A DNA stretch of 64,000 nucleotides from positions 124,001-188,000 of IMG/VR virus record IMGVR_UViG_3300024999_000029; one strand, given 5' to 3'. Below are positions 2,217 to 25,397 of the stretch, piece after piece. Made by a program: the position numbers and the translations under genes. How positions within the stretch are numbered: the first letter of the stretch is position 1; each line of letters opens with the position of its first letter. The notes below the pieces were generated by a model that saw nothing but the letters and a program-made list of their open reading frames with translations, ran no database searches and was not told where the DNA came from.

Positions 2217-3386
2217 ATGGGAAAATACTTTACATATACTGAAGTAAAAAACTTTATTGAAATAGAAAGCCAATCAAATTGTAAATTAATTAGTAAGGAA
2301 TATATAAAATCATCCAAAAAGATAATTATTGAATGTGCTTGTGGCGAACAATTTGAAACAACTTTAGATAGTTTTAAACGAGCAAATAAAAGACAATGTA
2401 ACAAATGTTCTAGATCGTTAATAAGTGAAAGATATAGATTAAAATATGATGATGTTAAAAACTATATTGAAATAGAAAGCAACTCTATGTGTAAATTATT
2501 GTCTGAAGAGTATATAAATTCTGGAAGACATTTAAAATTATTATGTAGGTGTGGGAATATATTTTCTAAAAGCCTAAGTAACTTTAAAAAGGGGCAATAT
2601 GTTTGTAATAAATGTAGTAAAAAAGAACAAATTAAAACATTCTTATACCCTTATGAAGATATAAGAAACTTCATAGAATTTTACAGTAATAGCGACTGTG
2701 TATTATTAACTGAAGAAAAAGATTACGTTAACACTAATAATAAAATAAAAATTAGATGTAAATGTGGGAATGTTTTTGAAACTAAATTCCAATCATTTTT
2801 ACATAAAACTAAACGCCAATGTAATGAATGTGGTGATATTTTAAGAGCAGATGGTTCAAGACTGCCATATGATTTCGTTAAAAACTTTATAGAAAATATA
2901 AAAGGATATAAATTATTATCAGATACATACATAAATTCTGGAACTAAATTAGAGGTTCAATGCGACAAAGGACACATATATGAAGTAATTTGGGAGGACA
3001 TTCAGAAAGGAAACAGATGCCCATTTTGTAAAGAAACCCGTGGCGAAAAAAGAATTGAAGAATATTTATCTTTAAATAATGTTCAGCTTAAAATAGAAAA
3101 AATATTTTTAGATTGTAGATATATTCAACCGTTACGTTTTGATTTTTATTTACCAGAACATAATGTTTTAATAGAATATCAGGGTAAACAACATTATTTT
3201 CCTGTTGATTTTGCAGGGAAAGGAGAAGAGTGGGCTAACGAACAGTTTAAAATAAACCAAATTAAAGATCAAATTAAGAGAGACTATTGTAATAACAATA
3301 ATATAAAATTGTTAGAAATACCGTATTGGGATTTTGATAATATAGAAGACATACTATCAAGCAACTTATTAAAGGAGGTGGGCTAG
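2217..3386 (+). CDS. Putative homing endonuclease: repeated Cys zinc-ribbon DNA-binding units plus C-terminal PD-(D/E)xK (Vsr/DUF559-like) nuclease
   Basis: Four CxCG..F......F......CxxC-type repeats; C-terminal LRFDFYLPEHNVLIEYQGKQHY motif; sits between two halves of a tail gene. Confidence 0.8.
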   Translation: MGKYFTYTEVKNFIEIESQSNCKLISKEYIKSSKKIIIECACGEQFETTLDSFKRANKRQCNKCSRSLISERYRLKYDDVKNYIEIESNSMCKLLSEEYINSGRHLKLLCRCGNIFSKSLSNFKKGQYVCNKCSKKEQIKTFLYPYEDIRNFIEFYSNSDCVLLTEEKDYVNTNNKIKIRCKCGNVFETKFQSFLHKTKRQCNECGDILRADGSRLPYDFVKNFIENIKGYKLLSDTYINSGTKLEVQCDKGHIYEVIWEDIQKGNRCPFCKETRGEKRIEEYLSLNNVQLKIEKIFLDCRYIQPLRFDFYLPEHNVLIEYQGKQHYFPVDFAGKGEEWANEQFKINQIKDQIKRDYCNNNNIKLLEIPYWDFDNIEDILSSNLLKEVG

Positions 3387-13261: not shown

Positions 13262-16200
13262 ATGTCTTACTTACCTAACAATAGAGAATTTAGAGATCCA
13301 ACAGTATTTGATGTTAGAGATTTTGCCGTTCAAAGAACAGATATAAATAAAAAAATAATAAACAATAGAATCCCTTTGGAAGAAAAGCCAGATATTATAC
13401 ATCATGTTCAAATTAGTGGATATACTGAGATATTTGATAATAGCGTACCCACGGAAAATCAATTTAAATGTGATTATACTAATGATTATCTAACTTTTAA
13501 TCCACTAAAAGAAGGAGTAGTAATACCAAGTATTAGCTATTGGGGACTTGGGAATATATTGATAAGTGCAGATAAAGTATATTTGCATAATGATAATCCA
13601 GATGCAACTATAACCTTACAAGATATGATTGACGACGGAGAGCAAGCACTTGTGGCTATGGGCGGATTAGAGAGCGTAATATCTTCTGCTACATTGCATG
13701 AAGCCAGTTTAGAGGCAGATATCGTTACAGCTACAAGCAAAGAATCAAGTTTAGAAGCAGATATTGCCACAGCTACGACGAAAAAAAGCGACCTTGATGG
13801 TTCTATATCTACAGCTACCACAACTAAGGCTAATTTAGATGGAAGTAACACAACTGCATTGGTAACTAAATCAGCTTTAGATGCATCTAATACTACTGCC
13901 AATACCACGAAAACTAATTTAGATAATAGTAATACTACTGCACTAGCAACAAAAACAGCACTAGATTTATCTAATACAACGGCTAACAATACTAAGACAA
14001 ATCTAGATAGTAGTATACTTGCAGGAGATGCATCAAAAACAAATTTAGATGCGAGTGTTATTTTAGGTAATACAAGTAAGTCTAATTTGGATTTAAGCAT
14101 TTCTACGTCTATAACTAAGAAAGCAGATTTGGATTCTAGCATATCAACAGCAACAACCAAAAAGAGTGATTTAGATGCTAGTATTTCTAACGCTAATAAT
14201 AGCAAGACTGCTTTAGATATTAGCAAAGCAAATGCTGATAATAGTAAAACCGCTTTAGATTTAAGTATAGGAACTGGAAATGCTTTAAAAACAAACTTAG
14301 ATTCAAATATTTCCACAGGAACTACTCTTAATACCAATTTAGGAAATTCTATATCTGGTGGCAATACTACTAAAACAAATTTAGATGGTTCTATTTCTAC
14401 AGCTACAACACTCAACGGCACATTAGATGGAACAATTGTTACAGCAAATACTTCAATAAGTGAACTAAATACTACAAATGACAGTTTTATTGTTTGGGAA
14501 GCGTATAATTCTACTCATACATATTATCCATTAAATAAGGTTTCATGGAATGGTAGTAGCTATATTTGTCTATCTACTTGTACTAATATACTTCCCTCAA
14601 ATAATAGTTATTTCATGTTGATTTGTGCAAAAGGAGTAGATGGAACTGGTGCAGTAATGAATATTAATTCAACTAATAGCGATATTGCTGTAGGGAATCC
14701 TACTGGAGAAGTTTTATTAACATTAAATTCAGGTACTGGTGCTTATCAGATAGTTAAATTAGATAGTAATGGGAAAATACCTTTGGCAGTTATCCCAGAT
14801 ATAGCTAAACAACAAACTTATGTTGTTACAGATTTAACAGCAAGGAATGCTCTTACAGGATTAGTAAGTGGTGATACTTGTTATTTAACAAGTAATGGAG
14901 ATTCATATATTTACAATGGTTCTACATGGGTATTAATGGCTGATGCGGATTGGGCTAATATAAGCCTCGATTGGACTAATATAGTTGGCAGACCAACTTC
15001 AAGCGTAGCTAATATTGACGATGCAGTAACTAAGAAACATAGTCATGTAAATCAAACAATATTAGATAATACAACCGCTAGTTTTTTAACAGCAGATGAA
15101 ACTAAATTAGACGGTATATCAACTGGAGCGAATAAAACTGAATCAAGCTCTACTAATGGAAATATCAAAGTAGATGGAATAGAGAAAACTGTTTATACTC
15201 ATCCGTCAACTCATAGTGCAGATATTATAGTAGATGGAACTACTAATAAAACATATACGGCAACAGAAAAGACTAAACTAAATAGTATAGTTATAGCAAC
15301 TCAAGAAGAAGCAGAATCTAGCACATCAAACACAACATTCATGACTCCGTTGCGTACAACACAATTAATAGAAAATCCAATCTACACAGCAGAAGCAACA
15401 ACAACACAACAAGTAACCTCTCTGCCATCCACCGCAATGAAATCACCTTTCGCCGCGGCAGAGTTAGAAGGTAACACTAATACTAATATAGTCACAAATA
15501 GTAATTTTGCTGACGGTACTACTGGGTGGACACCACAATTTTCAACTCTTTCGACAATAAACAATATATTATCTGTAACGGGTAATGGTATCAATTCAGC
15601 AGCTTCGACTTACCAAAATACAAACATAGATTGCGTAGAAGGTAAAAAAGTTTTCGCTAGAGTTAAATTAAGTGTTACAAACAGCAATTCAACTTTAATA
15701 GACTTACGTTTATTGGGGAGTTTAGGCGGTACTATTCAAATCGCACAGCAAACCACGCCAACAATTAATCAGGTTTATGAATTATTTGGAATAGCAACTT
15801 TAACAAGCTTTAATCTTGGCAAGGTGCAAATACGACCAGTACAGTTTTACGCAGATGCCACAACAGCAACTGGAAAAGTTATGGAAGTACAAGAAGTATT
15901 AGCAATAGATATGGGTGCAGATAGCACCAATCCACTTTACAATCTTACAGCAGACCAGATGAACGCACGGTTCGCTAACTGGTTTGATAGCACTAAAAGC
16001 GTTGGAATGCAGAGAGTAAAGAGTGTTGGGAAGAATTTGTTTGACGTAAATAGTTATAATACAAAATCGTCAACAGGTATAAAAGTTATAACTGTTGACG
16101 AAATAGCATTTACCACAACAGGTAATGCATCTGGTAGTCTATATTTTAAAATATATTCAGGATTGAGTGATTATAATACTGTTGTTAGTACAAGTGATTA

Positions 16201-19200
16201 TTATTCATCTGCTGGAAACAAAACAGTAACAACTACTACTACAAACGAAACTTTTTACAGACTTGTATTTGGTATAAATGGGAATGCACAAGATGCTAAA
16301 CTTTATTATAGGCTGAAATTAAAACCTAATACAACATATAAAGCTACTTTAAATATATCTAGTTTTTCAGCGAACTCTATAATTGTTGATAATACTATTC
16401 AAATCGAAGAAAGCTCAACGGTAACTTATGCTACTAGAGTTTACGAACCCTACACAGAATCCACAGCGTACACAACACCAGAGTTACGTAGAGTAGGCAC
16501 AGTAGCAGATACGGTGGATTTGCTTAGTGGGAGGCATACTAAATATATTAGTGATTGGCATAGTTTACAGGCAAGTGATATAACTACGCTTGGAACAACA
16601 AGAACGAACGTAGATACGCTTATAGTAGCGTTACCACTTGCTAAAGCAGCAATTACAGGGGCTACGCAAAATGTTTTTAAAGTGCCAAATTTTAATGCCT
16701 CTACTTTGTCAACTATAATAGATGACATTCAATATATAGGTCAATATGTTTATAGTGCAAGCATAAACGCAAATTTAGTTTTAGTAATTGCAAAAGGTAC
16801 GTACGCAAGCCTAGCAGCAGCACAAACAGCACTTGCAGGGACACAAATACTGTATCAACTAGCAACACCAACTACGACAAATTACCTCCCTAGTACTTTA
16901 ATAAGCGAACCAAACGGAACAATATACACAGAACCTAGCATAACTGATGTAGGTTATTACGGTACAAATATTGCTGTTGCTGACACGGATTATCCTATAA
17001 GCAGTTTAGATTGGATTAATAAAATTGATGTTGATACTGGAGCGTTTATACCTGTGGATATTGCAACATGTACCGTTGCGAGTGGTGGATTGAGTTTTAC
17101 AATTTCGACAGCTACGGTCGATGAGTGTTACGAGTATGCATATAACTACAGTACGGCATTAAGCGTAATACCTAGTTTGGCTTATAGCTATAGCACTAAC
17201 TTAAAAGCACAGGTGAATGAGACGGTTAGTGCGGTGGAGAGGTTGGACAGAAAGATAGAAGAAAAGTCGGCTAATTTAAAAATAGCTACAGAAGCAGAAG
17301 CAGAAGCTGGAACGTCAAATACTGTATTCATGACTCCACTTAGAACAACACAATTAATCGAAAACGCCACATACACAGCAGAAGCAACAACAACACAACA
17401 AGTAACCTCTCTACCATCCACAGCAATGAAATCACCTTTTGCATCAGCAGAGTTAGAAGGTAATACTAATACTAATATAGTCACAAATAGTAATTTTACA
17501 AGTACTGCTGGGTGGACACTAACCGTAGGTGCTACAGTAAGTGCAGCAAATAATGTACTGAACCTTACAGGCAGTGGCAGCAGTAGCTCTCCTCAAACCT
17601 ATCAACAGTCAATTATTCCAGTAGTAACTGGCAAAAAAATGTACATCACAGGGAGAGCTAGGGTTACAAACGCAAATTGCCAATATTTATACATAAAAAT
17701 ATCTGATGGCACTGGAACTACTATAACAGGTTCTCCTGCGGTTGTAGCTGCTCCAGTGCCAAATACGTGGTATACATTTTCGGCAATAGCAACTTGTCAA
17801 GCGTCACTGAGCGGAAATTTTAGAGTGTATTTAATGCATACCTACGTAGACGCCGCCACAGCAAGCGGAAAAGTAATGGAAGTCAAAGAAGTAATGGCAA
17901 TCGATATGGGCGTAGACAGCACCAATCCACTTTACAATCTTACAGCAGACCAGATGAACGCACGTTTTGCTAACTGGTTTGATACTACTAAATCCATTGC
18001 ACCGCAGAGAGTTAAGAGTGTTGGGAAGAATTTGTTTGATAAAAACGATATATTAATTTATGGCAAACGCTTATCTGGAACTGCAAATGGTGCAACAACA
18101 ACAGATGTGACGTATAACGTAACTGGCTATATGCGGGTAAATCCATCTAGTACTTATTGCAAGACGAATTTTGCTAGTACAGTAGCGTTTTATGATAAAA
18201 GCAAAATATTCATATCCGAAGTGTATACAAATCCTTTTACAGTTCCTGCAAATGCGATATATGCTATATCATCCGTACTGGTTGCTAATTTAGATACCGC
18301 ACAACTCGAACTCGGCTCATCCGCAACAACATACGAACCCTACACAGAATCCACAGCGTACACAACACCAGAGTTACGTAGAGTAGGCACAGTAGCAGAT
18401 ACAGTGGATTTGCTGACGGGGAAGTATGCTAAGAATATTAGTGATTGGTATAGTTTACAGGCAAGTGATATAACAGCGCTAATTACAACAGGAGTAAATG
18501 CTGATTATATTCAAACTAACGTTAGTTTTTTACCTTTGGCTAAACCATCTAATGGAACTGTGCAAAATATAATAAAAGTAGGTAATTATCCAGAAACAAC
18601 TATTGCTCTTTTTGACAGTGCAGACTCACATTGGAAATTCGTATACTCTGAAACCGAAAGAATCGTTATTATATTTCCTAAAGGCACATACGCAAGCCTA
18701 GCGGCAGCACAAGCAGCACTAGCAGGGACACAAATACTTTACCAACTAGCAGTACCAACCACCGCAAATTATCTACCTAGCAACCTAACAAGCAAGCCAA
18801 GTGGTACATTATATTTAGAGCCTAGCATAACAGATGTAGGTTACTATGGTGCTAATATTGCTATTGCAGATACGGATTATCCAATTGCAACATTAGATTT
18901 TATGAATAAAATTGATGTCGGTAATGGTACTTTTACGCTTGTAGATATTACAGCTTGTACAGTGGCTAGTGGTGGATTGAGTTTTACTATTAGCGGGGCA
19001 ACGGCTGGTGAGTATTACGAGTACGGTTATAACTATAGCACAGAGTTGAGCGTAATACCTAGTTTGAGTTATAGTTATAGTACTAATTTAAAAGCACAGG
19101 TGAATGAGACGGTTAGTGCGGTGGAGAGGTTGGAGGAAGCGTTAGACGAACTTTTTACGTCTGCCAGTAATGGGAAAACCGCTATTGCATCGGCTATTGC

Positions 19201-20194
19201 TGGCATGGGACAATCTGCAAGTGGAAGCGATACTTTTTTACAACTAGCAACCAAGATAGCTGATATATCAGATGATGCAAATGCTGTAGCATCTCATGTA
19301 TTAGCTGGGGAGACATTCTATCAGGGCGGCAGTAAAAAAACAGGCAATATGATAAGTAAGATTGGTAGTGCAACCGTGATTACTCCATCCACGGTAGACC
19401 AAGCTATAGCACAAGGATATTATGGGGGTTTGGCAGCAGATGGAAAAGTGCTGGGCGATGTAGATTTAGTAACAGGAAATATTAGAGCGGGAGTTAATAT
19501 TTTCGGGGTGGCAGGAAAATCCAGTGTGGTGGAAACTTCTGATGGAGATGCAGTAGCATCAAATATATTAAATGGTAAGAAAGCTTATGTTAATGGAAGT
19601 TTAATTACTGGTAACGTACCTTCAAAAACAGGGGATACTGGATCATTGCCTAGCTCAAATATTGGAGGAGCTTGGGATGGAGCATTGGTATTAGGTACAC
19701 CAAATGGTTTATATAATGGGGAGTGGCACATTCAAATTATAGATAACCTATGGGCTTCTAATATTAAAGCTGGAGTAAAAGTAGGAAATGTTGCAGGATT
19801 AGGTATTGTAGGAACATGTGAGCCTAAAGAGGTTACCGCTGGCGATATAACAATGTTTAGTTATGCGCCTAGTAATACCGCATATGGCACTTCATATTCT
19901 AGGGTAAGGGGGGCTACAGTTCACATAAAAGGTAGCTATAGGGTTAAGTTCGACCTATCTAGTCAAAATGCAGGAGCTACCGCCTACGGCAGAATATATA
20001 TAAATAACACACCAGTGGGTACAGAAAGGTCGACAACATCAACTGACTACACTAATTATGTAGAAGACATTATAAATGTAAACCCCGGAGATATCATAGG
20101 TATATGGGGCAGAGTTGTAGGCAGTACTGGTGCAAGAGTACAGAATTTTGTTTTAGCCGCTGCTCAAAGTATTGTTCCTGTATATACAAATTAG
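13262..20194 (+). CDS. Large modular tail fibre / receptor-binding protein (2310 aa)
   Basis: Upstream of holin/lysin; 14-aa coiled-coil repeats; CBM5/12-like WEAYN...YYPLNKVSWNGSSYIC; two tandem modules of about 630-650 aa; fibre-type C-terminus. Confidence 0.85.
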   Translation: MSYLPNNREFRDPTVFDVRDFAVQRTDINKKIINNRIPLEEKPDIIHHVQISGYTEIFDNSVPTENQFKCDYTNDYLTFNPLKEGVVIPSISYWGLGNILISADKVYLHNDNPDATITLQDMIDDGEQALVAMGGLESVISSATLHEASLEADIVTATSKESSLEADIATATTKKSDLDGSISTATTTKANLDGSNTTALVTKSALDASNTTANTTKTNLDNSNTTALATKTALDLSNTTANNTKTNLDSSILAGDASKTNLDASVILGNTSKSNLDLSISTSITKKADLDSSISTATTKKSDLDASISNANNSKTALDISKANADNSKTALDLSIGTGNALKTNLDSNISTGTTLNTNLGNSISGGNTTKTNLDGSISTATTLNGTLDGTIVTANTSISELNTTNDSFIVWEAYNSTHTYYPLNKVSWNGSSYICLSTCTNILPSNNSYFMLICAKGVDGTGAVMNINSTNSDIAVGNPTGEVLLTLNSGTGAYQIVKLDSNGKIPLAVIPDIAKQQTYVVTDLTARNALTGLVSGDTCYLTSNGDSYIYNGSTWVLMADADWANISLDWTNIVGRPTSSVANIDDAVTKKHSHVNQTILDNTTASFLTADETKLDGISTGANKTESSSTNGNIKVDGIEKTVYTHPSTHSADIIVDGTTNKTYTATEKTKLNSIVIATQEEAESSTSNTTFMTPLRTTQLIENPIYTAEATTTQQVTSLPSTAMKSPFAAAELEGNTNTNIVTNSNFADGTTGWTPQFSTLSTINNILSVTGNGINSAASTYQNTNIDCVEGKKVFARVKLSVTNSNSTLIDLRLLGSLGGTIQIAQQTTPTINQVYELFGIATLTSFNLGKVQIRPVQFYADATTATGKVMEVQEVLAIDMGADSTNPLYNLTADQMNARFANWFDSTKSVGMQRVKSVGKNLFDVNSYNTKSSTGIKVITVDEIAFTTTGNASGSLYFKIYSGLSDYNTVVSTSDYYSSAGNKTVTTTTTNETFYRLVFGINGNAQDAKLYYRLKLKPNTTYKATLNISSFSANSIIVDNTIQIEESSTVTYATRVYEPYTESTAYTTPELRRVGTVADTVDLLSGRHTKYISDWHSLQASDITTLGTTRTNVDTLIVALPLAKAAITGATQNVFKVPNFNASTLSTIIDDIQYIGQYVYSASINANLVLVIAKGTYASLAAAQTALAGTQILYQLATPTTTNYLPSTLISEPNGTIYTEPSITDVGYYGTNIAVADTDYPISSLDWINKIDVDTGAFIPVDIATCTVASGGLSFTISTATVDECYEYAYNYSTALSVIPSLAYSYSTNLKAQVNETVSAVERLDRKIEEKSANLKIATEAEAEAGTSNTVFMTPLRTTQLIENATYTAEATTTQQVTSLPSTAMKSPFASAELEGNTNTNIVTNSNFTSTAGWTLTVGATVSAANNVLNLTGSGSSSSPQTYQQSIIPVVTGKKMYITGRARVTNANCQYLYIKISDGTGTTITGSPAVVAAPVPNTWYTFSAIATCQASLSGNFRVYLMHTYVDAATASGKVMEVKEVMAIDMGVDSTNPLYNLTADQMNARFANWFDTTKSIAPQRVKSVGKNLFDKNDILIYGKRLSGTANGATTTDVTYNVTGYMRVNPSSTYCKTNFASTVAFYDKSKIFISEVYTNPFTVPANAIYAISSVLVANLDTAQLELGSSATTYEPYTESTAYTTPELRRVGTVADTVDLLTGKYAKNISDWYSLQASDITALITTGVNADYIQTNVSFLPLAKPSNGTVQNIIKVGNYPETTIALFDSADSHWKFVYSETERIVIIFPKGTYASLAAAQAALAGTQILYQLAVPTTANYLPSNLTSKPSGTLYLEPSITDVGYYGANIAIADTDYPIATLDFMNKIDVGNGTFTLVDITACTVASGGLSFTISGATAGEYYEYGYNYSTELSVIPSLSYSYSTNLKAQVNETVSAVERLEEALDELFTSASNGKTAIASAIAGMGQSASGSDTFLQLATKIADISDDANAVASHVLAGETFYQGGSKKTGNMISKIGSATVITPSTVDQAIAQGYYGGLAADGKVLGDVDLVTGNIRAGVNIFGVAGKSSVVETSDGDAVASNILNGKKAYVNGSLITGNVPSKTGDTGSLPSSNIGGAWDGALVLGTPNGLYNGEWHIQIIDNLWASNIKAGVKVGNVAGLGIVGTCEPKEVTAGDITMFSYAPSNTAYGTSYSRVRGATVHIKGSYRVKFDLSSQNAGATAYGRIYINNTPVGTERSTTSTDYTNYVEDIINVNPGDIIGIWGRVVGSTGARVQNFVLAAAQSIVPVYTN
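13664..14470 (+). repeat. About 19 degenerate 14-aa (42-bp) tandem repeats
   Basis: xLDxSxxTAxxxKx units, for example DLDGSISTATTTKA, NLDGSNTTALVTKS, DLDSSISTATTKKS. Confidence 0.9.
15293..19134 (+). repeat. Tandem duplication of an approximately 1.9-kb module inside the tail fibre gene (15293-17247 and 17282-19134)
   Basis: Identical blocks include 16442-16512 = 18332-18402 (71 bp) and 17201-17247 = 19088-19134 (47 bp), separated by unrelated variable segments. Confidence 0.92.
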
Positions 20195-20205
20195 GAGGGA
20201 AAACC

Positions 20206-20457
20206 ATGTCAAGAAAAGTATACTATACCGATGAAAATAGACAAGAATTGATTGACGAAGCCACAGTAAATGGGGAGTTTTTAGTAGAGGATGCTATAAC
20301 TTTAAATGACGGTAATTATTTAGTATTTGATGATGCCCCAATAGAACCAGAGCAGGCACCTGAGGAACGTATAGCAGAGCTGGAAGTCCAATTAAGTAAT
20401 GCGACCAGTTTGTTAAACGATGCCACAAGTCTATTGATAGAAGCGGAGGTGCTGTAA
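20206..20457 (+). CDS. Tail fibre-associated small protein (chaperone-like)
   Basis: SD aggaggg; start MSRKVYY; position directly after the fibre gene. Confidence 0.6.
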   Translation: MSRKVYYTDENRQELIDEATVNGEFLVEDAITLNDGNYLVFDDAPIEPEQAPEERIAELEVQLSNATSLLNDATSLLIEAEVL

Positions 20458-22443: not shown

Positions 22444-22785
22444 TCAGTTTGTTGTACCCCAAGACAATTTTGTGTCAGAAATGAATGTAGGCTTGAAATT
22501 CGGGTCTTTATAGTTAATTGTGTATGATCCGTCGGAATTTATTATTACCTCGCTAATTAGCTCTCTCATGAACTTATTATCTTTAATAAATTGAGTATTT
22601 GATATATTACATTGTTTTAAAACTACTGAAGCTAATTCTTCTTCGTTTATGAAGCTTTTATTTATACATGCTTGTGTGCCATTTTTTAAACGGTTGTTGC
22701 AGCGATAATTTATTTGATTACGTTCTTTCCTACCTTTATATGTGTGGTTGCAATTTTGACAATGGATTAGTGAACTGAATAACAT
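22444..22785 (-). CDS. Stand-alone recombinase zinc-beta-ribbon domain protein
   Basis: LFSSLIHCQNCNHTY...YRCNNR...C...FINEEEL pattern; directly downstream of the serine recombinase. Confidence 0.75.
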   Translation of the reverse strand: MLFSSLIHCQNCNHTYKGRKERNQINYRCNNRLKNGTQACINKSFINEEELASVVLKQCNISNTQFIKDNKFMRELISEVIINSDGSYTINYKDPNFKPTFISDTKLSWGTTN

Positions 22786-22845: not shown

Positions 22846-24588
22846 TTAAGAAGCAAGTTCAAATTGTAAATCTATAATGTAATTAACCTCTACAGGATGT
22901 GTATCTCTAGCGTTTTTCTTTCTAAAAAATTTAAACATGCGTTTGTTATCTTCTATATGTGTGATAAACATCAAATGCATATCTCTTATGAAGTAAACTG
23001 GTATTTCACCCAGACCCGCTTTTAATACAACATTAATGCATATTTCATTTTTTTCTTTCCCTTTTGATACTTCAATTTTTTCCAAAAATTTATCCATTGT
23101 TTCTTCGTCTAGTTCACTGTTAATATCAAAATCAAAATTAAAGAATTCTTTTAATGATTTTACTTGTGATGCTACATCATACTTTGCATCGTTTAATTTT
23201 TCATAATTTTTTATTCGTTTTTCATAACCCTCAATTTCATCATTTAAATCTTTAATTTGTTCTTGATAATCGTTGTCCGCTACATTTCCTCCCGCATATA
23301 ACCGTAAAAGATTTTTCTTTAATACTTTATTTTCATTTATATTGTTCATCAACTCTTTAATATCTTTGTCATAATTAACTTCTTTTAAATATTTAGAATG
23401 TAGTTCAGTTAATTCTTTGCTAAAAACGTTTTTATACTTAGAATACATATGTAGTACGTGTTTCATAATATCATCCAACTCATTTTTATACATCATTGGA
23501 CTATCGCAAAATTTTTTACCTTTTTTTCTATAAATTTTACATTGCCATACTTCTTTTGATTCTATAGTGTCGTATTTATAAAAATTTCTCCAATATGATG
23601 TTTTGTGTTCTGAGCAAATTATTTTTCCAGAATATAAGAATTTATTTTGATACGATGTCTTATCTTCGGATGTCATTTTTTCACTTCTTTGTTTTAAGAT
23701 ATTGTTTGCCTTTTCCCATATTTCCTCGGAAACAATTGGTGGAACGCTTTCATAATCTTTATATGTTATCCATTTATCTGAATTAAAAAACTCTCGCTCT
23801 TTTGTAATAAAATCTATTGTTGTTGATTTTTTACCACAATAATATCCCTTATATTTTGGATTAGTAATAATAGATTTTATAGTATTAAACGTAATGGGGT
23901 TTCCGTTTCTATTTACAATTTCTTTTTGAGACAGCATATCGGATACTGTCCTTATTCCTTTATTTTGATTTGCATATAAATCGAAGATTTGACATACAAT
24001 TTCAGCTTCTTCTTTCTCTATTACTAGTTTGCCATTTTCTTTATTATATCCCCATATTTTATTATTCCCCAACACTTTTCCCGAATCGATTGAACGTTTA
24101 TGCCCCCATTTAACTCTATCTGATATCTTTCTACTTTCTTCTTGAGCTAAACTAGACATTATGGCAAGTTTAACCTCCGAATCTGGCATCAAGGTATTTA
24201 TTCCATCATTTTGAAATAGCACTCCTATACCGTATTTTAATAATTCTCTAGTATAAAACAAGCTATCAATTGTATTTCTAGCAAATCTACTTACTTCTTT
24301 AGTTATAACTAAATCAAATTTCTTATTTCTTCCGTCTTCAATCATTTGGTTAAATGCTTCTCTTTTATTGATTGATGTGCCTGTAATACCTTCATCGATG
24401 TATCCTTCTACGAGAGTCCAATTATTACAACTTTTAATATGTTCTTCAAAATAATTAATTTGATTCTTGAGAGAGTTTAATTGATCTAAGGTAGAAGTTG
24501 ATACCCTAGTATAATATGTAACTCTTAACTGTAAGTCGTAGATAGATTTGCCTAGATTCAAAGTATTTCTAATTGTATATAAGTCCAT
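22846..24588 (-). CDS. Large serine recombinase (integrase)
   Basis: YYTRVSTS catalytic motif, YIDEGITGT, KEVSRFARN, recombinase domain, Zn ribbon (SGKIICSEH) and coiled coil. Confidence 0.95.
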   Translation of the reverse strand: MDLYTIRNTLNLGKSIYDLQLRVTYYTRVSTSTLDQLNSLKNQINYFEEHIKSCNNWTLVEGYIDEGITGTSINKREAFNQMIEDGRNKKFDLVITKEVSRFARNTIDSLFYTRELLKYGIGVLFQNDGINTLMPDSEVKLAIMSSLAQEESRKISDRVKWGHKRSIDSGKVLGNNKIWGYNKENGKLVIEKEEAEIVCQIFDLYANQNKGIRTVSDMLSQKEIVNRNGNPITFNTIKSIITNPKYKGYYCGKKSTTIDFITKEREFFNSDKWITYKDYESVPPIVSEEIWEKANNILKQRSEKMTSEDKTSYQNKFLYSGKIICSEHKTSYWRNFYKYDTIESKEVWQCKIYRKKGKKFCDSPMMYKNELDDIMKHVLHMYSKYKNVFSKELTELHSKYLKEVNYDKDIKELMNNINENKVLKKNLLRLYAGGNVADNDYQEQIKDLNDEIEGYEKRIKNYEKLNDAKYDVASQVKSLKEFFNFDFDINSELDEETMDKFLEKIEVSKGKEKNEICINVVLKAGLGEIPVYFIRDMHLMFITHIEDNKRMFKFFRKKNARDTHPVEVNYIIDLQFELAS

Positions 24589-24923: not shown

Positions 24924-25397
24924 TTAAATAATTACTTTTTTTACTTCTTTTTGAACCATGTGCCATCCAATGCAAATAGCATCCGCCTCATCTTCAGAAG
25001 CATCTATATCAAATTGTTCTTTGACAAAATTTTGAGCATTGGCTTTTTGATCCACTCTTTTTTTTCCTTTAACTCCACATGTAGACTTCCATTTTGAAGG
25101 TTCTATGATAAAGTACAGCAGCTCTTGTTCATATAGATTGTTTTTCATAACTCCTAATAGTTCTGCTAGAGGCTTATACCCCTGTAAATTACCTTGATAT
25201 TGTATTTGTTCTATTGCTACAATTTCAGCTTTTTGATTTTTAATTAGGTTGTTAGCTTCAGTTTTTAGTTTAAATATTCTCTCATCTGAATTTTCGATCT
25301 CACTAAAATCTAAAACTCCGTGATTAATTAAATTCTCATTATCGAATACCGAATATCCTGTTTTGTTGGTTGACTGGTCGAACGAAATTACTCTCAT
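24924..25397 (-). CDS. ruvC: RuvC-like Holliday junction resolvase
   Basis: ISFDQSTNKTGY, VAIEQIQ, PSKWK and DEADAICIG acidic motifs. Confidence 0.85.
   Translation of the reverse strand: MRVISFDQSTNKTGYSVFDNENLINHGVLDFSEIENSDERIFKLKTEANNLIKNQKAEIVAIEQIQYQGNLQGYKPLAELLGVMKNNLYEQELLYFIIEPSKWKSTCGVKGKKRVDQKANAQNFVKEQFDIDASEDEADAICIGWHMVQKEVKKVII

What the first reader, a model, noticed from the sequence alone, without database searches (positions are those of the whole stretch)
15293..19134. Tail fibre built from two tandem ~1.9-kb modules with near-identical scaffold blocks around unrelated variable inserts
Seen in sequence: module 1 (15293-17247) and module 2 (17282-19134) share identical DNA blocks (71 bp at 16442/18332, 47 bp at 17201/19088, about 45 bp near 15925/17919). 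These alternate with three segments that differ almost completely: after NIVTNSNF, after KSVGKNLFD and after LQASDIT. Inference: the conserved blocks act as recombination handles for swapping, deleting or amplifying receptor-binding domains, giving host-range variation without an invertase or DGR. The identical blocks imply recent duplication or ongoing gene conversion.
Basis: partly seen in the sequence, partly recalled or inferred. Interest (0 to 1): 0.6.

Follow-up and report, generated by a model that had tools for sequence, protein, structure and literature searches.

The report
Two-module mosaic phage tail fibre
One giant tail-fibre gene of a 349-kb groundwater phage holds two in-frame copies of a roughly 630-residue sugar-binding unit whose frame is nearly the same but whose binding cores differ; this is the familiar mix-and-match evolution of phage host-recognition proteins, with no sign that it acts as a live switch.

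Summary
Window 15293-19162 lies inside one ORF (13262-20194, 2310 aa) and contains two in-frame tandem modules. Four scaffold blocks are 80-86% identical in protein, with exact DNA runs of 71, 47, 47 and 41 bp. They alternate with three segments only 20-34% identical.

Each module is a copy of a family that normally occurs as a single-module tail protein of 560-1120 aa. It starts with a CBM4/9/16/22-like jelly roll, whose core is variable segment 1.

The scaffold blocks are the motifs conserved across the whole family. Synonymous divergence is patchy: dS is 0.18-0.63 in most scaffold blocks, but about 1.2 (saturated) in block C4b and in all variable segments. The same mosaic appears in two unrelated pairs of single-module proteins and in two other two-module proteins.

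My reading is an old tandem duplication shaped by recombination, meaning gene conversion of the scaffold, cassette replacement, or both.

I found no evidence of ongoing switching. Three assemblies of the phage are clonal, with 0-1 mismatch in 18 kb. The public runs offer only contigs, and these show no one-module or three-module joint. The genome has no reverse transcriptase and no invertible segment.

Verdict: a new member of a known kind, of moderate interest.

The parts
13262..20194 (+). Whole tail-fibre gene, 2310 aa (P0001)
   Evidence: Single open frame. It lies downstream of a minor tail protein and upstream of the holin and endolysin.
13262..15292 (+). N-terminal part (aa 1-677): attachment region, a periodic Ser/Thr/Asp-rich repeat region (aa about 127-400), then a short CBM5/12-like motif (aa about 409-458)
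   Evidence: PHROG hits phrog_11315, phrog_28838 and phrog_7946, all of unknown function. An 84-nt tandem array lies at 13830-14019. The single-module relative P0002 shares this layout. The CBM_5_12 hit is weak, E 0.23.
15293..17281 (+). Module 1 (aa 678-1340)
   Evidence: HMM match at aa 680-1337, E 1.7e-209. AlphaFold model m653571914348.
15293..15526 (+). Scaffold block C1 of module 1: linker, fibre motif and first strands of the jelly roll. Its partner is 17282-17512.
   Evidence: 85% protein identity; 84% DNA identity; dS 0.50; exact runs of 41 and 33 bp.
15527..15868 (+). Variable segment V1 of module 1: core of the CBM-like jelly roll
   Evidence: 34% identical to V1 of module 2. The best hits are other phages' proteins: P0016 49%, P0004 45%. 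Fold match Z 14.7 to CBM22 1h6x.
15869..16045 (+). Scaffold block C2 of module 1: last jelly-roll strand, a helix and a linker. Its partner is 17864-18040.
   Evidence: 86% protein identity; dS 0.43; exact 47-bp run at 15923-15969. This is the best-conserved block family-wide.
16046..16438 (+). Variable segment V2 of module 1 (131 aa), an orphan
   Evidence: No BLASTP match to V2 of module 2 and one weak hit in the family. pLDDT is below 31. The Atlas gave no lead.
16439..16588 (+). Scaffold block C3 of module 1. Its partner is 18329-18478.
   Evidence: 86-88% protein identity; 90% DNA identity; dS 0.18; exact 71-bp run at 16442-16512.
16589..16795 (+). Variable segment V3 of module 1
   Evidence: 27% identical to V3 of module 2 and no BLASTP hit in the family.
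16796..17245 (+). Scaffold block C4 of module 1: C-terminal beta-rich domain and closing helix. Its partner is 18683-19132.
   Evidence: 80% protein identity. dS is 0.63 in C4a, 1.22 in C4b and 0.20 in C4c. Exact 47-bp run at 17201-17247.
17282..19162 (+). Module 2 (aa 1341-1967)
   Evidence: HMM match at aa 1343-1967, E 4.8e-224. AlphaFold model mc5c5ea31a1b2, mean pLDDT 85.
17513..17863 (+). Variable segment V1 of module 2: core of the CBM-like jelly roll
   Evidence: Best hits are L031 42% and L027 44%. Fold match Z 14.6 to 8hhv and 13.6 to CBM16 2zew.
18041..18328 (+). Variable segment V2 of module 2 (96 aa): a small beta domain of the type common in the family
   Evidence: 44% identical to the single-module ORF of L004. 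Beta strands are predicted with pLDDT 70-93, apart from a low-confidence loop.
18479..18682 (+). Variable segment V3 of module 2
   Evidence: No BLASTP hit in the family.
19163..20194 (+). C-terminal part (aa 1968-2310): short Gly-rich repeats and a terminal domain of unknown kind
   Evidence: The only lead is a weak BclA_C hit, E 0.016, below the cut-off. This part was not studied further.

Best explanation
The region is an old, in-frame tandem duplication of a complete receptor-binding module inside the tail-fibre gene of a 349-kb phage. The host is probably a Bacillota bacterium.

Each module is a three-part unit:
- D1 is a CBM4/9/16/22-like jelly roll. Its first and last strands lie in scaffold blocks C1 and C2, and its core is V1.
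- D2 is a small beta domain whose core is V2.
- D3 is a C-terminal beta-rich domain made of C3 and C4, with V3 inserted. It ends in a helix that leads into the next module.

The scaffold blocks are the parts under structural constraint in the whole family. The variable segments are the exposed cores that presumably contact the host's cell-wall glycans. The fibre would therefore carry two different sets of binding surfaces in series.

The present pattern was made by homologous recombination over evolutionary time. Short gene-conversion tracts between the two copies keep patches of scaffold nearly identical, and/or variable cores were replaced by alleles from other phages through crossovers in the scaffold.

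Shown: the anatomy, the D1 fold, the patchy synonymous divergence, the family-wide mosaic, and the absence of a DGR or an invertible segment.

Inferred: glycan binding, trimeric fibre assembly, which of the two recombination routes acted, and the host.
For: Anatomy and exact repeats.

The module is a family unit:
- 27 relatives of 394-1121 aa were found; those scanned mostly hold one module. P0002 has the same N-terminal layout as this fibre but only one module.
- P0029 and P0030 hold two modules each.

D1 fold:
- Z 14.7 and 14.6 to CBM22 and an arabinanase CBM; Z 13.1-13.6 to CBM16.
- Phage baseplate matches: phi812 Z 13, Tuc2009 BppA Z 10-11.
- 8 of 20 D1 relatives hit Pfam CBM_4_9.

Different histories of scaffold and cores:
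- Identical codons at identical residues are 77-90% in C1, C2, C3 and C4c, 61-62% in C4a and C4b, and 52-55% in V1-V3. Chance is 40-49%.
- Fisher tests give p=6e-5 (C3+C4c against C4a+b) and p=3e-6 (C1+C2+C3+C4c, without C4a/b, against variable).
- NG86 dS is 0.18-0.63 against 1.1-1.7.
- The longest identical run is 71 nt against 31 expected, P=5e-5.

Incongruence:
- In the scaffold, the two modules are each other's best hit (81-89% against 71% or less for anything else).
- In V1 each module is nearer to other phages' proteins, and V2 of module 2 matches L004 at 44%.
- In the V1 tree, module 1 joins P0004 with support 97/86.

Same mosaic elsewhere:
- P0008 with P0015, P0011 with P0012, and the two modules of P0030 all show it.
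- In both allelic pairs dS is lower in most scaffold blocks and saturated in the cores.

In the scaffold tree the modules of each two-module protein are sisters: 98, 100 and 98.

Other mechanisms are absent:
- No RVT_1 in the genome and no further module copy.
- No meaningful inverted repeats.
- The nearby recombinase is a 580-aa large serine recombinase.
Against: - The AU test does not reject a module 1 + module 2 clade in V1 (p=0.19). Cassette import into V1 is therefore suggested, not proven.
- dS in the variable segments rests on poor alignments and would look saturated for that reason alone.
- Only block C4b gives a well-aligned high dS, and it is 85 codons.
- Low dS in short, highly conserved blocks could partly reflect codon-level constraint.
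- No close relative with a different insert or a different module number was found. The only near relatives are clonal.
- Binding function and trimer state are untested.
Confidence: 0.6

Rival explanations
1. Duplication and selection only. An old tandem duplication was followed by purifying selection on the scaffold and fast diversifying selection on the binding cores, with no recombination.
For: - The conserved blocks are the motifs conserved in relatives that share only about 30% identity.
- Short stretches of these blocks keep 80-89% DNA identity even in distant phages, as expected from identical residues alone.
- The AU test does not reject common origin of the two V1 segments.
Against: - Synonymous sites should diverge alike everywhere, yet identical-codon fractions differ strongly between blocks.
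- The 71-nt identical run is far longer than randomly placed differences would give.
- The two V2 segments differ in length (131 against 96 aa) and find no BLASTP match to each other, while V2 of module 2 is 44% identical to a protein of another phage.
Confidence: 0.2
2. The identical blocks act now as recombination handles, so the phage population keeps producing one-, two- and three-module fibres or swapped cores at a useful rate.
For: - Direct repeats of 41-71 bp lie in register, with offsets that are multiples of three, so any crossover in them would give an in-frame chimera.
- Minor contigs in the same groundwater runs (depth 3-6 against 17-66) match blocks C1, C3 or C4 at 90% or more and then run into unlike, G+C-richer DNA. 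One of them is followed by a linker like the one between modules 1 and 2.
Against: - Three assemblies carry the same two modules, with 0-1 mismatch in 18 kb.
- No joint with exact module-1 sequence on one side and exact module-2 sequence on the other was seen. The one in-register joint carries 9 other letters and 18 unmatched letters, so it comes from a third, diverged copy.
- The runs are kept only as contigs, which drop rare variants, so this absence is weak evidence.
Confidence: 0.12
3. Assembly artefact. Two alleles of a single-module gene from two strains were joined in tandem by the assembler.
For: Logan contigs break exactly at the identical blocks, which shows that the repeats are hard for short-read assemblers.
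Against: - The frame stays open across 6.9 kb.
- Three assemblies give the same join.
- Mean word depth is alike over the unique parts of both modules in each run (about 55-66 in X1, 16-22 in X2).
- The junction bin 17215-17375 is covered, and a contig in X4 spans 17201-17476.
- Other proteins from unrelated samples also have two modules.
Confidence: 0.03

Closest known systems
Gp38 adhesins and the distal tail-fibre locus of T-even phages (Tetart et al. 1998, cited in PMC12032242)
   Same: Conserved motifs alternate with hypervariable segments that set host specificity. The conserved motifs have been proposed as recombination hot spots for modular shuffling.
   Different: There is no sequence or fold relation. 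Gp38 is a small monomeric adhesin with glycine-rich motifs of a few residues. Here the conserved blocks are 50-150 residues of beta-domain frame in a 2310-aa fibre, and the whole unit is duplicated in tandem.
[quoted passage not shown]
   Same: A jelly-roll CBM is inserted in a tail protein, sometimes twice in one protein. D1 matches the Tuc2009 tripod chain 5e7t_B at Z 10.2-11.3. One relative (P0020) is named BppU family by its source.
   Different: The repeated unit here is a three-domain module of about 630 aa, not a single CBM. The protein has no Dit or Tal N-terminal domain, and it belongs to a 349-kb phage.
VR1/VR2 variable islands in the host-specificity protein of Streptococcus thermophilus phages (Duplessis and Moineau 2001, as described in PMC7533335)
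   Same: Islands of variable sequence lie within an otherwise conserved tail protein, and exchanging the gene changes host specificity.
   Different: That contrast is between alleles of different phages. Here the same contrast is also seen between two copies within one gene. No homology was tested or found.
BACON domain tandem repeats in crAss-like phage tail proteins (PMC6949934)
   Same: Tandem repeats of a carbohydrate-binding-type domain occur in a phage structural protein (title and abstract).
   Different: Those repeats are single small domains in variable number. Here there are two copies of a large composite module. I did not read that paper beyond its abstract.

Membership tests
CBM4/9/16/22-type beta-jelly-roll carbohydrate-binding modules (domain D1) | Jelly-roll beta-sandwich fold of about 140-160 residues | tested here: met
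   Module 1: Z 14.7, rmsd 2.5, 142 residues aligned to 1h6x. Module 2: Z 14.6 to 8hhv and 13.6 to 2zew and 1h6x. Foldseek E 4e-6 to CBM16. pLDDT is mostly 84-97 over the domain.
CBM4/9/16/22-type beta-jelly-roll carbohydrate-binding modules (domain D1) | Sequence match to Pfam CBM_4_9 (PF02018) | tested here: inconclusive
   Neither copy in the window matches, even at E up to 1. Of 20 aligned D1 relatives, 8 match, with best E 4.9e-6.
CBM4/9/16/22-type beta-jelly-roll carbohydrate-binding modules (domain D1) | Binds a carbohydrate | not testable with these tools
   This needs binding assays with the purified domain.
In-frame intragenic tandem duplication | Two adjacent, collinear, homologous units in one reading frame, each other's nearest relatives | tested here: met
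   In the scaffold trees the two modules are sisters with support 100 and 98.
Diversity-generating retroelement target (Mtd-like) | A reverse transcriptase and a template repeat that matches the variable region | tested here: not met
   No RVT_1 match in the 349-kb record, while the controls matched. No further DNA or protein copy of the modules exists in the genome.
Invertible tail-fibre switch (Gin/Cin/Min type) | A small serine invertase next to alternative fibre ends in opposite orientation, flanked by inverted repeats | tested here: not met
   The modules are direct repeats in one frame. The best inverted repeats are 15-33 nt at 70-88% complementarity and do not flank fibre segments. The nearby recombinase is a 580-aa large serine recombinase with Recombinase and Zn-ribbon domains.
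T-even Gp38-type adhesin | Homology to Gp38, with glycine-rich motifs framing the hypervariable segments | tested here: not met
   No Pfam or PHROG match of that kind, and the fold matches are CBM jelly rolls. The resemblance is one of evolutionary logic only.
Evolved Dit / Tal of siphophages | An N-terminal Dit (Sipho_tail) or Tal (gp27-like / Prophage_tail) domain | tested here: not met
   No such Pfam hit in P0001. In prophage relatives the module protein is a separate gene that lies between Dit and a Tal-like gene.

The most novel reading that the evidence does not exclude
The scaffold blocks are kept alike at the DNA level because in-register recombination between modules, and with fibres of co-resident phages, is itself useful. 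On this reading the family is a cassette system: phage populations keep generating fibres with new combinations and numbers of binding cores, without any dedicated enzyme. Two findings leave this open. Each of the three two-module proteins has scaffold modules that are sisters to each other. Minor contigs in the same aquifer share single blocks at 90-96% identity within unlike DNA.
Probability: 0.12. Interest if true: 0.6.

Novelty: new member of a known kind. Interest (0 to 1): 0.35.

Why it matters
The finding gives a clean natural example of how a very large phage builds a long fibre by repeating a whole receptor-binding unit and then varying only the exposed cores.

It also defines a module family of about 630 residues, largely without database annotation, that is found in phages and prophages of anaerobic Bacillota and in many metagenomes.

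The fixed frame with replaceable cores marks natural junction points that could guide host-range studies of such phages. If length or core variants were found in raw reads, the locus would become a tractable case of enzyme-free host-range variation.

Tried and rejected
- Searches of the INPHARED phage collection by DNA and by protein found nothing.
- Pfam gave nothing credible on the whole protein or on its eight pieces.
- PHROG hits cover only the N-terminus and have no known function.
- An exact 29-mer from the 71-bp block occurs in IMG/VR only in this phage's own records.
- Two 30-mers from the loose ends of the minor contigs are absent from IMG/VR, so the minor relatives could not be recovered.
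It was repeated with a 3-sequence alignment.
- Profile searches of D2 and D3 against PDB sequences gave no true relative. The leucine-rich-repeat hits rest on a single LxSLPNGVxD-like motif and are spurious.
- A profile-profile comparison of D1 with D2 matched only the columns the two alignments share.
- The Atlas search with D2 of module 1 gave scores of 0.81-0.83, which are not informative.
- The AU test for V1 was not significant.
- Fold searches of whole modules were dominated by D1, so the folds of D2 and D3 remain unnamed.
- I did not run the large representative search, on grounds of cost and because relatives were already in hand.
- DGR, invertible-switch and assembly-artefact readings were considered and rejected.
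Full report
**What is there**

The window is bases 124001-188000 of a 349,050-bp virus record that is estimated 99% complete. Its G+C content is 29%. The finding lies wholly inside one open reading frame, 13262-20194 on the + strand, encoding 2310 residues.

A self-comparison and a global alignment show two collinear units: residues 678-1340 and residues 1341 to about 1967. They are 55% identical over 668 columns. A profile built from the family matches residues 680-1337 and 1343-1967, with E-values of 1e-209 and 1e-224.

A codon-aware alignment gives the exact identical DNA runs:
- 71 bp at 16442/18332
- 47 bp at 17201/19088
- 47 bp at 15923/17918
- 41 bp at 15383/17372
- 33 bp at 15476/17465

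Shuffled sequence gives exact repeats of 12 bp on average and 15 at most. The offsets between copies (1989, 1995, 1890, 1887) are all multiples of three.

**Layout of a module**

By protein identity, each module divides into four scaffold blocks and three variable segments:

| Part | Identity between modules |
|---|---|
| C1 | 85% |
| V1 | 34% |
| C2 | 86% |
| V2 | 20% |
| C3 | 86% |
| V3 | 27% |
| C4 | 80% |

**What the gene is**

Upstream lies a minor tail protein (phrog_6211, with a YomG N-terminal domain). Downstream lie a holin (Phage_holin_4_1) and an M15/VanY-type endolysin. This order is typical of phages of Gram-positive bacteria.

Pfam finds nothing in the fibre itself. No phage in the INPHARED collection resembles it.

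A word-indexed search with module 1 found 27 relatives of 394-1121 residues at 26-49% identity, nearly all unnamed. Two come from genome records, a Syntrophomonas hypothetical protein and a Trichococcus protein that its source names 'BppU family phage baseplate upper protein'.

In two prophage-like loci, the single-module gene sits after the tape-measure and Dit genes, before a large Tal-like gene and the holin. P0002 (1121 aa) shares the N-terminal layout of this fibre but holds only one module.

A second search among long proteins found two further proteins with two tandem modules, P0029 and P0030. It also found proteins in which the module has extra insertions. In P0020 and in loci L034, L035, L039 and L048, only the first domain is repeated, two or three times.

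The module is thus a family unit that is usually single and is sometimes repeated, in whole or in part.

**Structure**

The AlphaFold models have mean pLDDT of 72 (module 1) and 85 (module 2).

In both models, module residues of about 55-245 form a jelly roll that matches carbohydrate-binding modules:
- CBM22 (1h6x): Z 14.7 and 13.6
- An arabinanase CBM (8hhv): Z 14.7 and 14.6
- CBM16 (2zew): Z 13.1 and 13.6
- Phage baseplate or fibre proteins: phi812 at Z 13, Pa193 at Z 12, Tuc2009 BppA at Z 10.2-11.3

Eight of 20 aligned relatives of this domain hit Pfam CBM_4_9.

The first strands of the jelly roll lie in C1 and the last strand lies in C2. V1 is the remainder of the sandwich. V1 is therefore not an unrelated insert but the diverged core of one fold.

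V2 of module 2 is a small beta domain of the type common in the family. V2 of module 1 is 35 residues longer, has no relatives and folds without confidence.

C3, V3 and C4 form a confident beta-rich C-terminal part that ends in a long helix. I could not name its fold, and it has no solved relative by sequence. BFVD matches are uncharacterised tail proteins, evolved Dit proteins and tail fibres of phages of Gram-positive hosts.

**History**

The scaffold blocks are the motifs conserved throughout the family, even at about 30% overall identity. Protein-level conservation therefore needs no special explanation.

The synonymous sites tell more:

| Block | Identical codon at identical residue | NG86 dS |
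|---|---|---|
| C1 | 77% | 0.50 |
| C2 | 79% | 0.43 |
| C3 | 90% | 0.18 |
| C4a | 62% | 0.63 |
| C4b | 61% | 1.22 |
| C4c | 89% | 0.20 |
| V1-V3 | 52-55% | 1.1-1.7 |

Chance identity is 40-49%.

- The contrasts are significant. Fisher's test gives p=6e-5 for C3+C4c against C4a+b, and p=3e-6 for C1+C2+C3+C4c (without C4a/b) against the variable segments.
- Within the scaffold, random placement of the 163 differences gives a longest identical run of 31 nt, with a 95th percentile of 43. The observed run is 71 nt, P=5e-5.
- C4b is well aligned (73% protein identity) and yet saturated at silent sites. The duplication is therefore old, and only patches of scaffold are young.

Segment-wise searches show incongruence:
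- In every scaffold block the two modules are each other's best hit (81-89% against 71% or less).
- V1 of module 1 is nearest to P0016 and P0004 (49% and 45%).
- V1 of module 2 is nearest to L031 and L027 (42% and 44%).
- V2 of module 2 is nearest to the L004 protein (44%).

A careful tree of V1 joins module 1 with P0004 (support 97/86). However, the AU test does not reject a clade of the two modules (p=0.19). This point is suggestive only.

**The same pattern elsewhere**

- Two pairs of single-module proteins from unrelated samples show the mosaic. P0008 with P0015 has 68-91% identity in the scaffold and 18-23% in the cores. P0011 with P0012 has 56-84% and 13-33%.
- In both pairs dS is 0.5-0.9 in most scaffold blocks (one block, C3 of P0011/P0012, reaches 1.4) and saturated in the cores.
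- The two modules of P0030 show 74-88% against 19-25%. Those of P0029 show it more weakly.
- In a scaffold tree, the two modules of each two-module protein are sisters (98, 100 and 98). This means either three independent duplications or concerted evolution within each gene.

A frame with replaceable cores is thus a property of the family, both between alleles and between tandem copies.

**Is it active now?**

- Two other IMG/VR records carry the same locus, with 0 and 1 mismatch over 18 kb.
- Four public runs hold the stretch. All are from one groundwater study and three samples, and all are kept only as Logan contigs.
- The contigs break at the identical blocks, as a 31-mer graph must. Depth is alike over both modules, and the junction between the modules is covered.
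- No clean one-module or three-module joint appears. The single in-register joint (17104 to 19010, with 18 letters between and 9 other letters) is a third, diverged copy at about a tenth of the depth.
- Other minor contigs match C1, C3 or C4 at 90-96% and then continue into unlike, G+C-richer DNA. This suggests relatives in the same community that share single blocks. I could not recover them.
- Contigs drop rare variants, so the absence of variants is weak evidence.

**Other mechanisms**

- The genome has no reverse transcriptase and no further copy of the modules.
- There are no inverted repeats that could flank an invertible segment.
- The recombinase 2.6 kb downstream is a 580-aa large serine recombinase of the integrase type.

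**Verdict**

The feature is real. Its best reading (confidence 0.6) is an old in-frame duplication of a three-domain receptor-binding module. Its frame is held by structural constraint and is partly homogenised by gene conversion. Its binding cores have diverged beyond recognition or were replaced by recombination.

The functional consequence, inferred and not tested, is a fibre with two different sets of glycan-binding surfaces.

The evolutionary logic is that long known for T-even gp37/gp38 and for Streptococcus thermophilus phages. The domain type is that of the CBM-decorated adhesion proteins of phages of Gram-positive bacteria.

It is therefore a new member of a known kind.

No genetic code other than table 11 was used.

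Noticed in passing
window 22846-24588 (-), 22444-22785 (-), 24924-25397 (-): A 580-aa large serine recombinase (Resolvase + Recombinase + Zn_ribbon_recom) lies 2.6 kb downstream of the fibre gene. Next to it are a 113-aa ORF holding only a recombinase zinc-ribbon domain and a RuvC-like resolvase. A second Resolvase-domain gene lies at G000:C1:322354-322803. An integrase-type enzyme in a 349-kb phage hints at a temperate or plasmid-like life style.
   Followed up: partly
window 14800-19600, runs X1-X4: Minor Logan contigs (depth 3-6 against 17-66) match scaffold blocks C1 (17355-17516, about 96%), C3 and C4. They then run into unlike, G+C-richer DNA. One is followed by a linker resembling the one between modules 1 and 2. 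These are probably other phages of the aquifer that share single blocks. They are not in IMG/VR.
   Followed up: partly
window 13640-14460 (array 13830-14019): The N-terminal third of the fibre is a long, imperfect periodic region rich in Ser, Thr, Asp, Asn and Leu, with a DNA period of 84 nt. The 294-aa antisense ORF at 13537-14421 is probably a by-product of this repeat.
   Followed up: no
window 20104-20457 (+): A 117-aa ORF overlaps the last 91 nt of the fibre gene in another frame and has no family match. It might be a fibre assembly factor, or it might not be a gene.
   Followed up: no
window 2217-3386 (+): An HNH/homing-type endonuclease gene (phrog_559) sits directly after the minor tail protein gene, among structural genes.
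   Followed up: no
L034, L035 (three copies each), L039, L048 (two copies each); P0020: In other metagenomic tail proteins only the CBM-like domain D1 is repeated in tandem, two or three times. Repetition in this family therefore occurs at both the domain level and the module level.
   Followed up: partly
window 15293-15376 and 17282-17365; L009-L014: Each module opens with a motif of about 25 residues (A-T-x-x-E-A-E ... M-T-P-L-R). This motif alone matches tail proteins of several unrelated viral contigs at 56-73% identity. It is a widespread fibre motif whose role I did not study.
   Followed up: no
window 19183: The only difference between this record and IMG/VR record 3300025011_000018 over 18 kb is T>A at 19183. 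It lies in the fibre gene just after module 2, at a third codon position.
   Followed up: no
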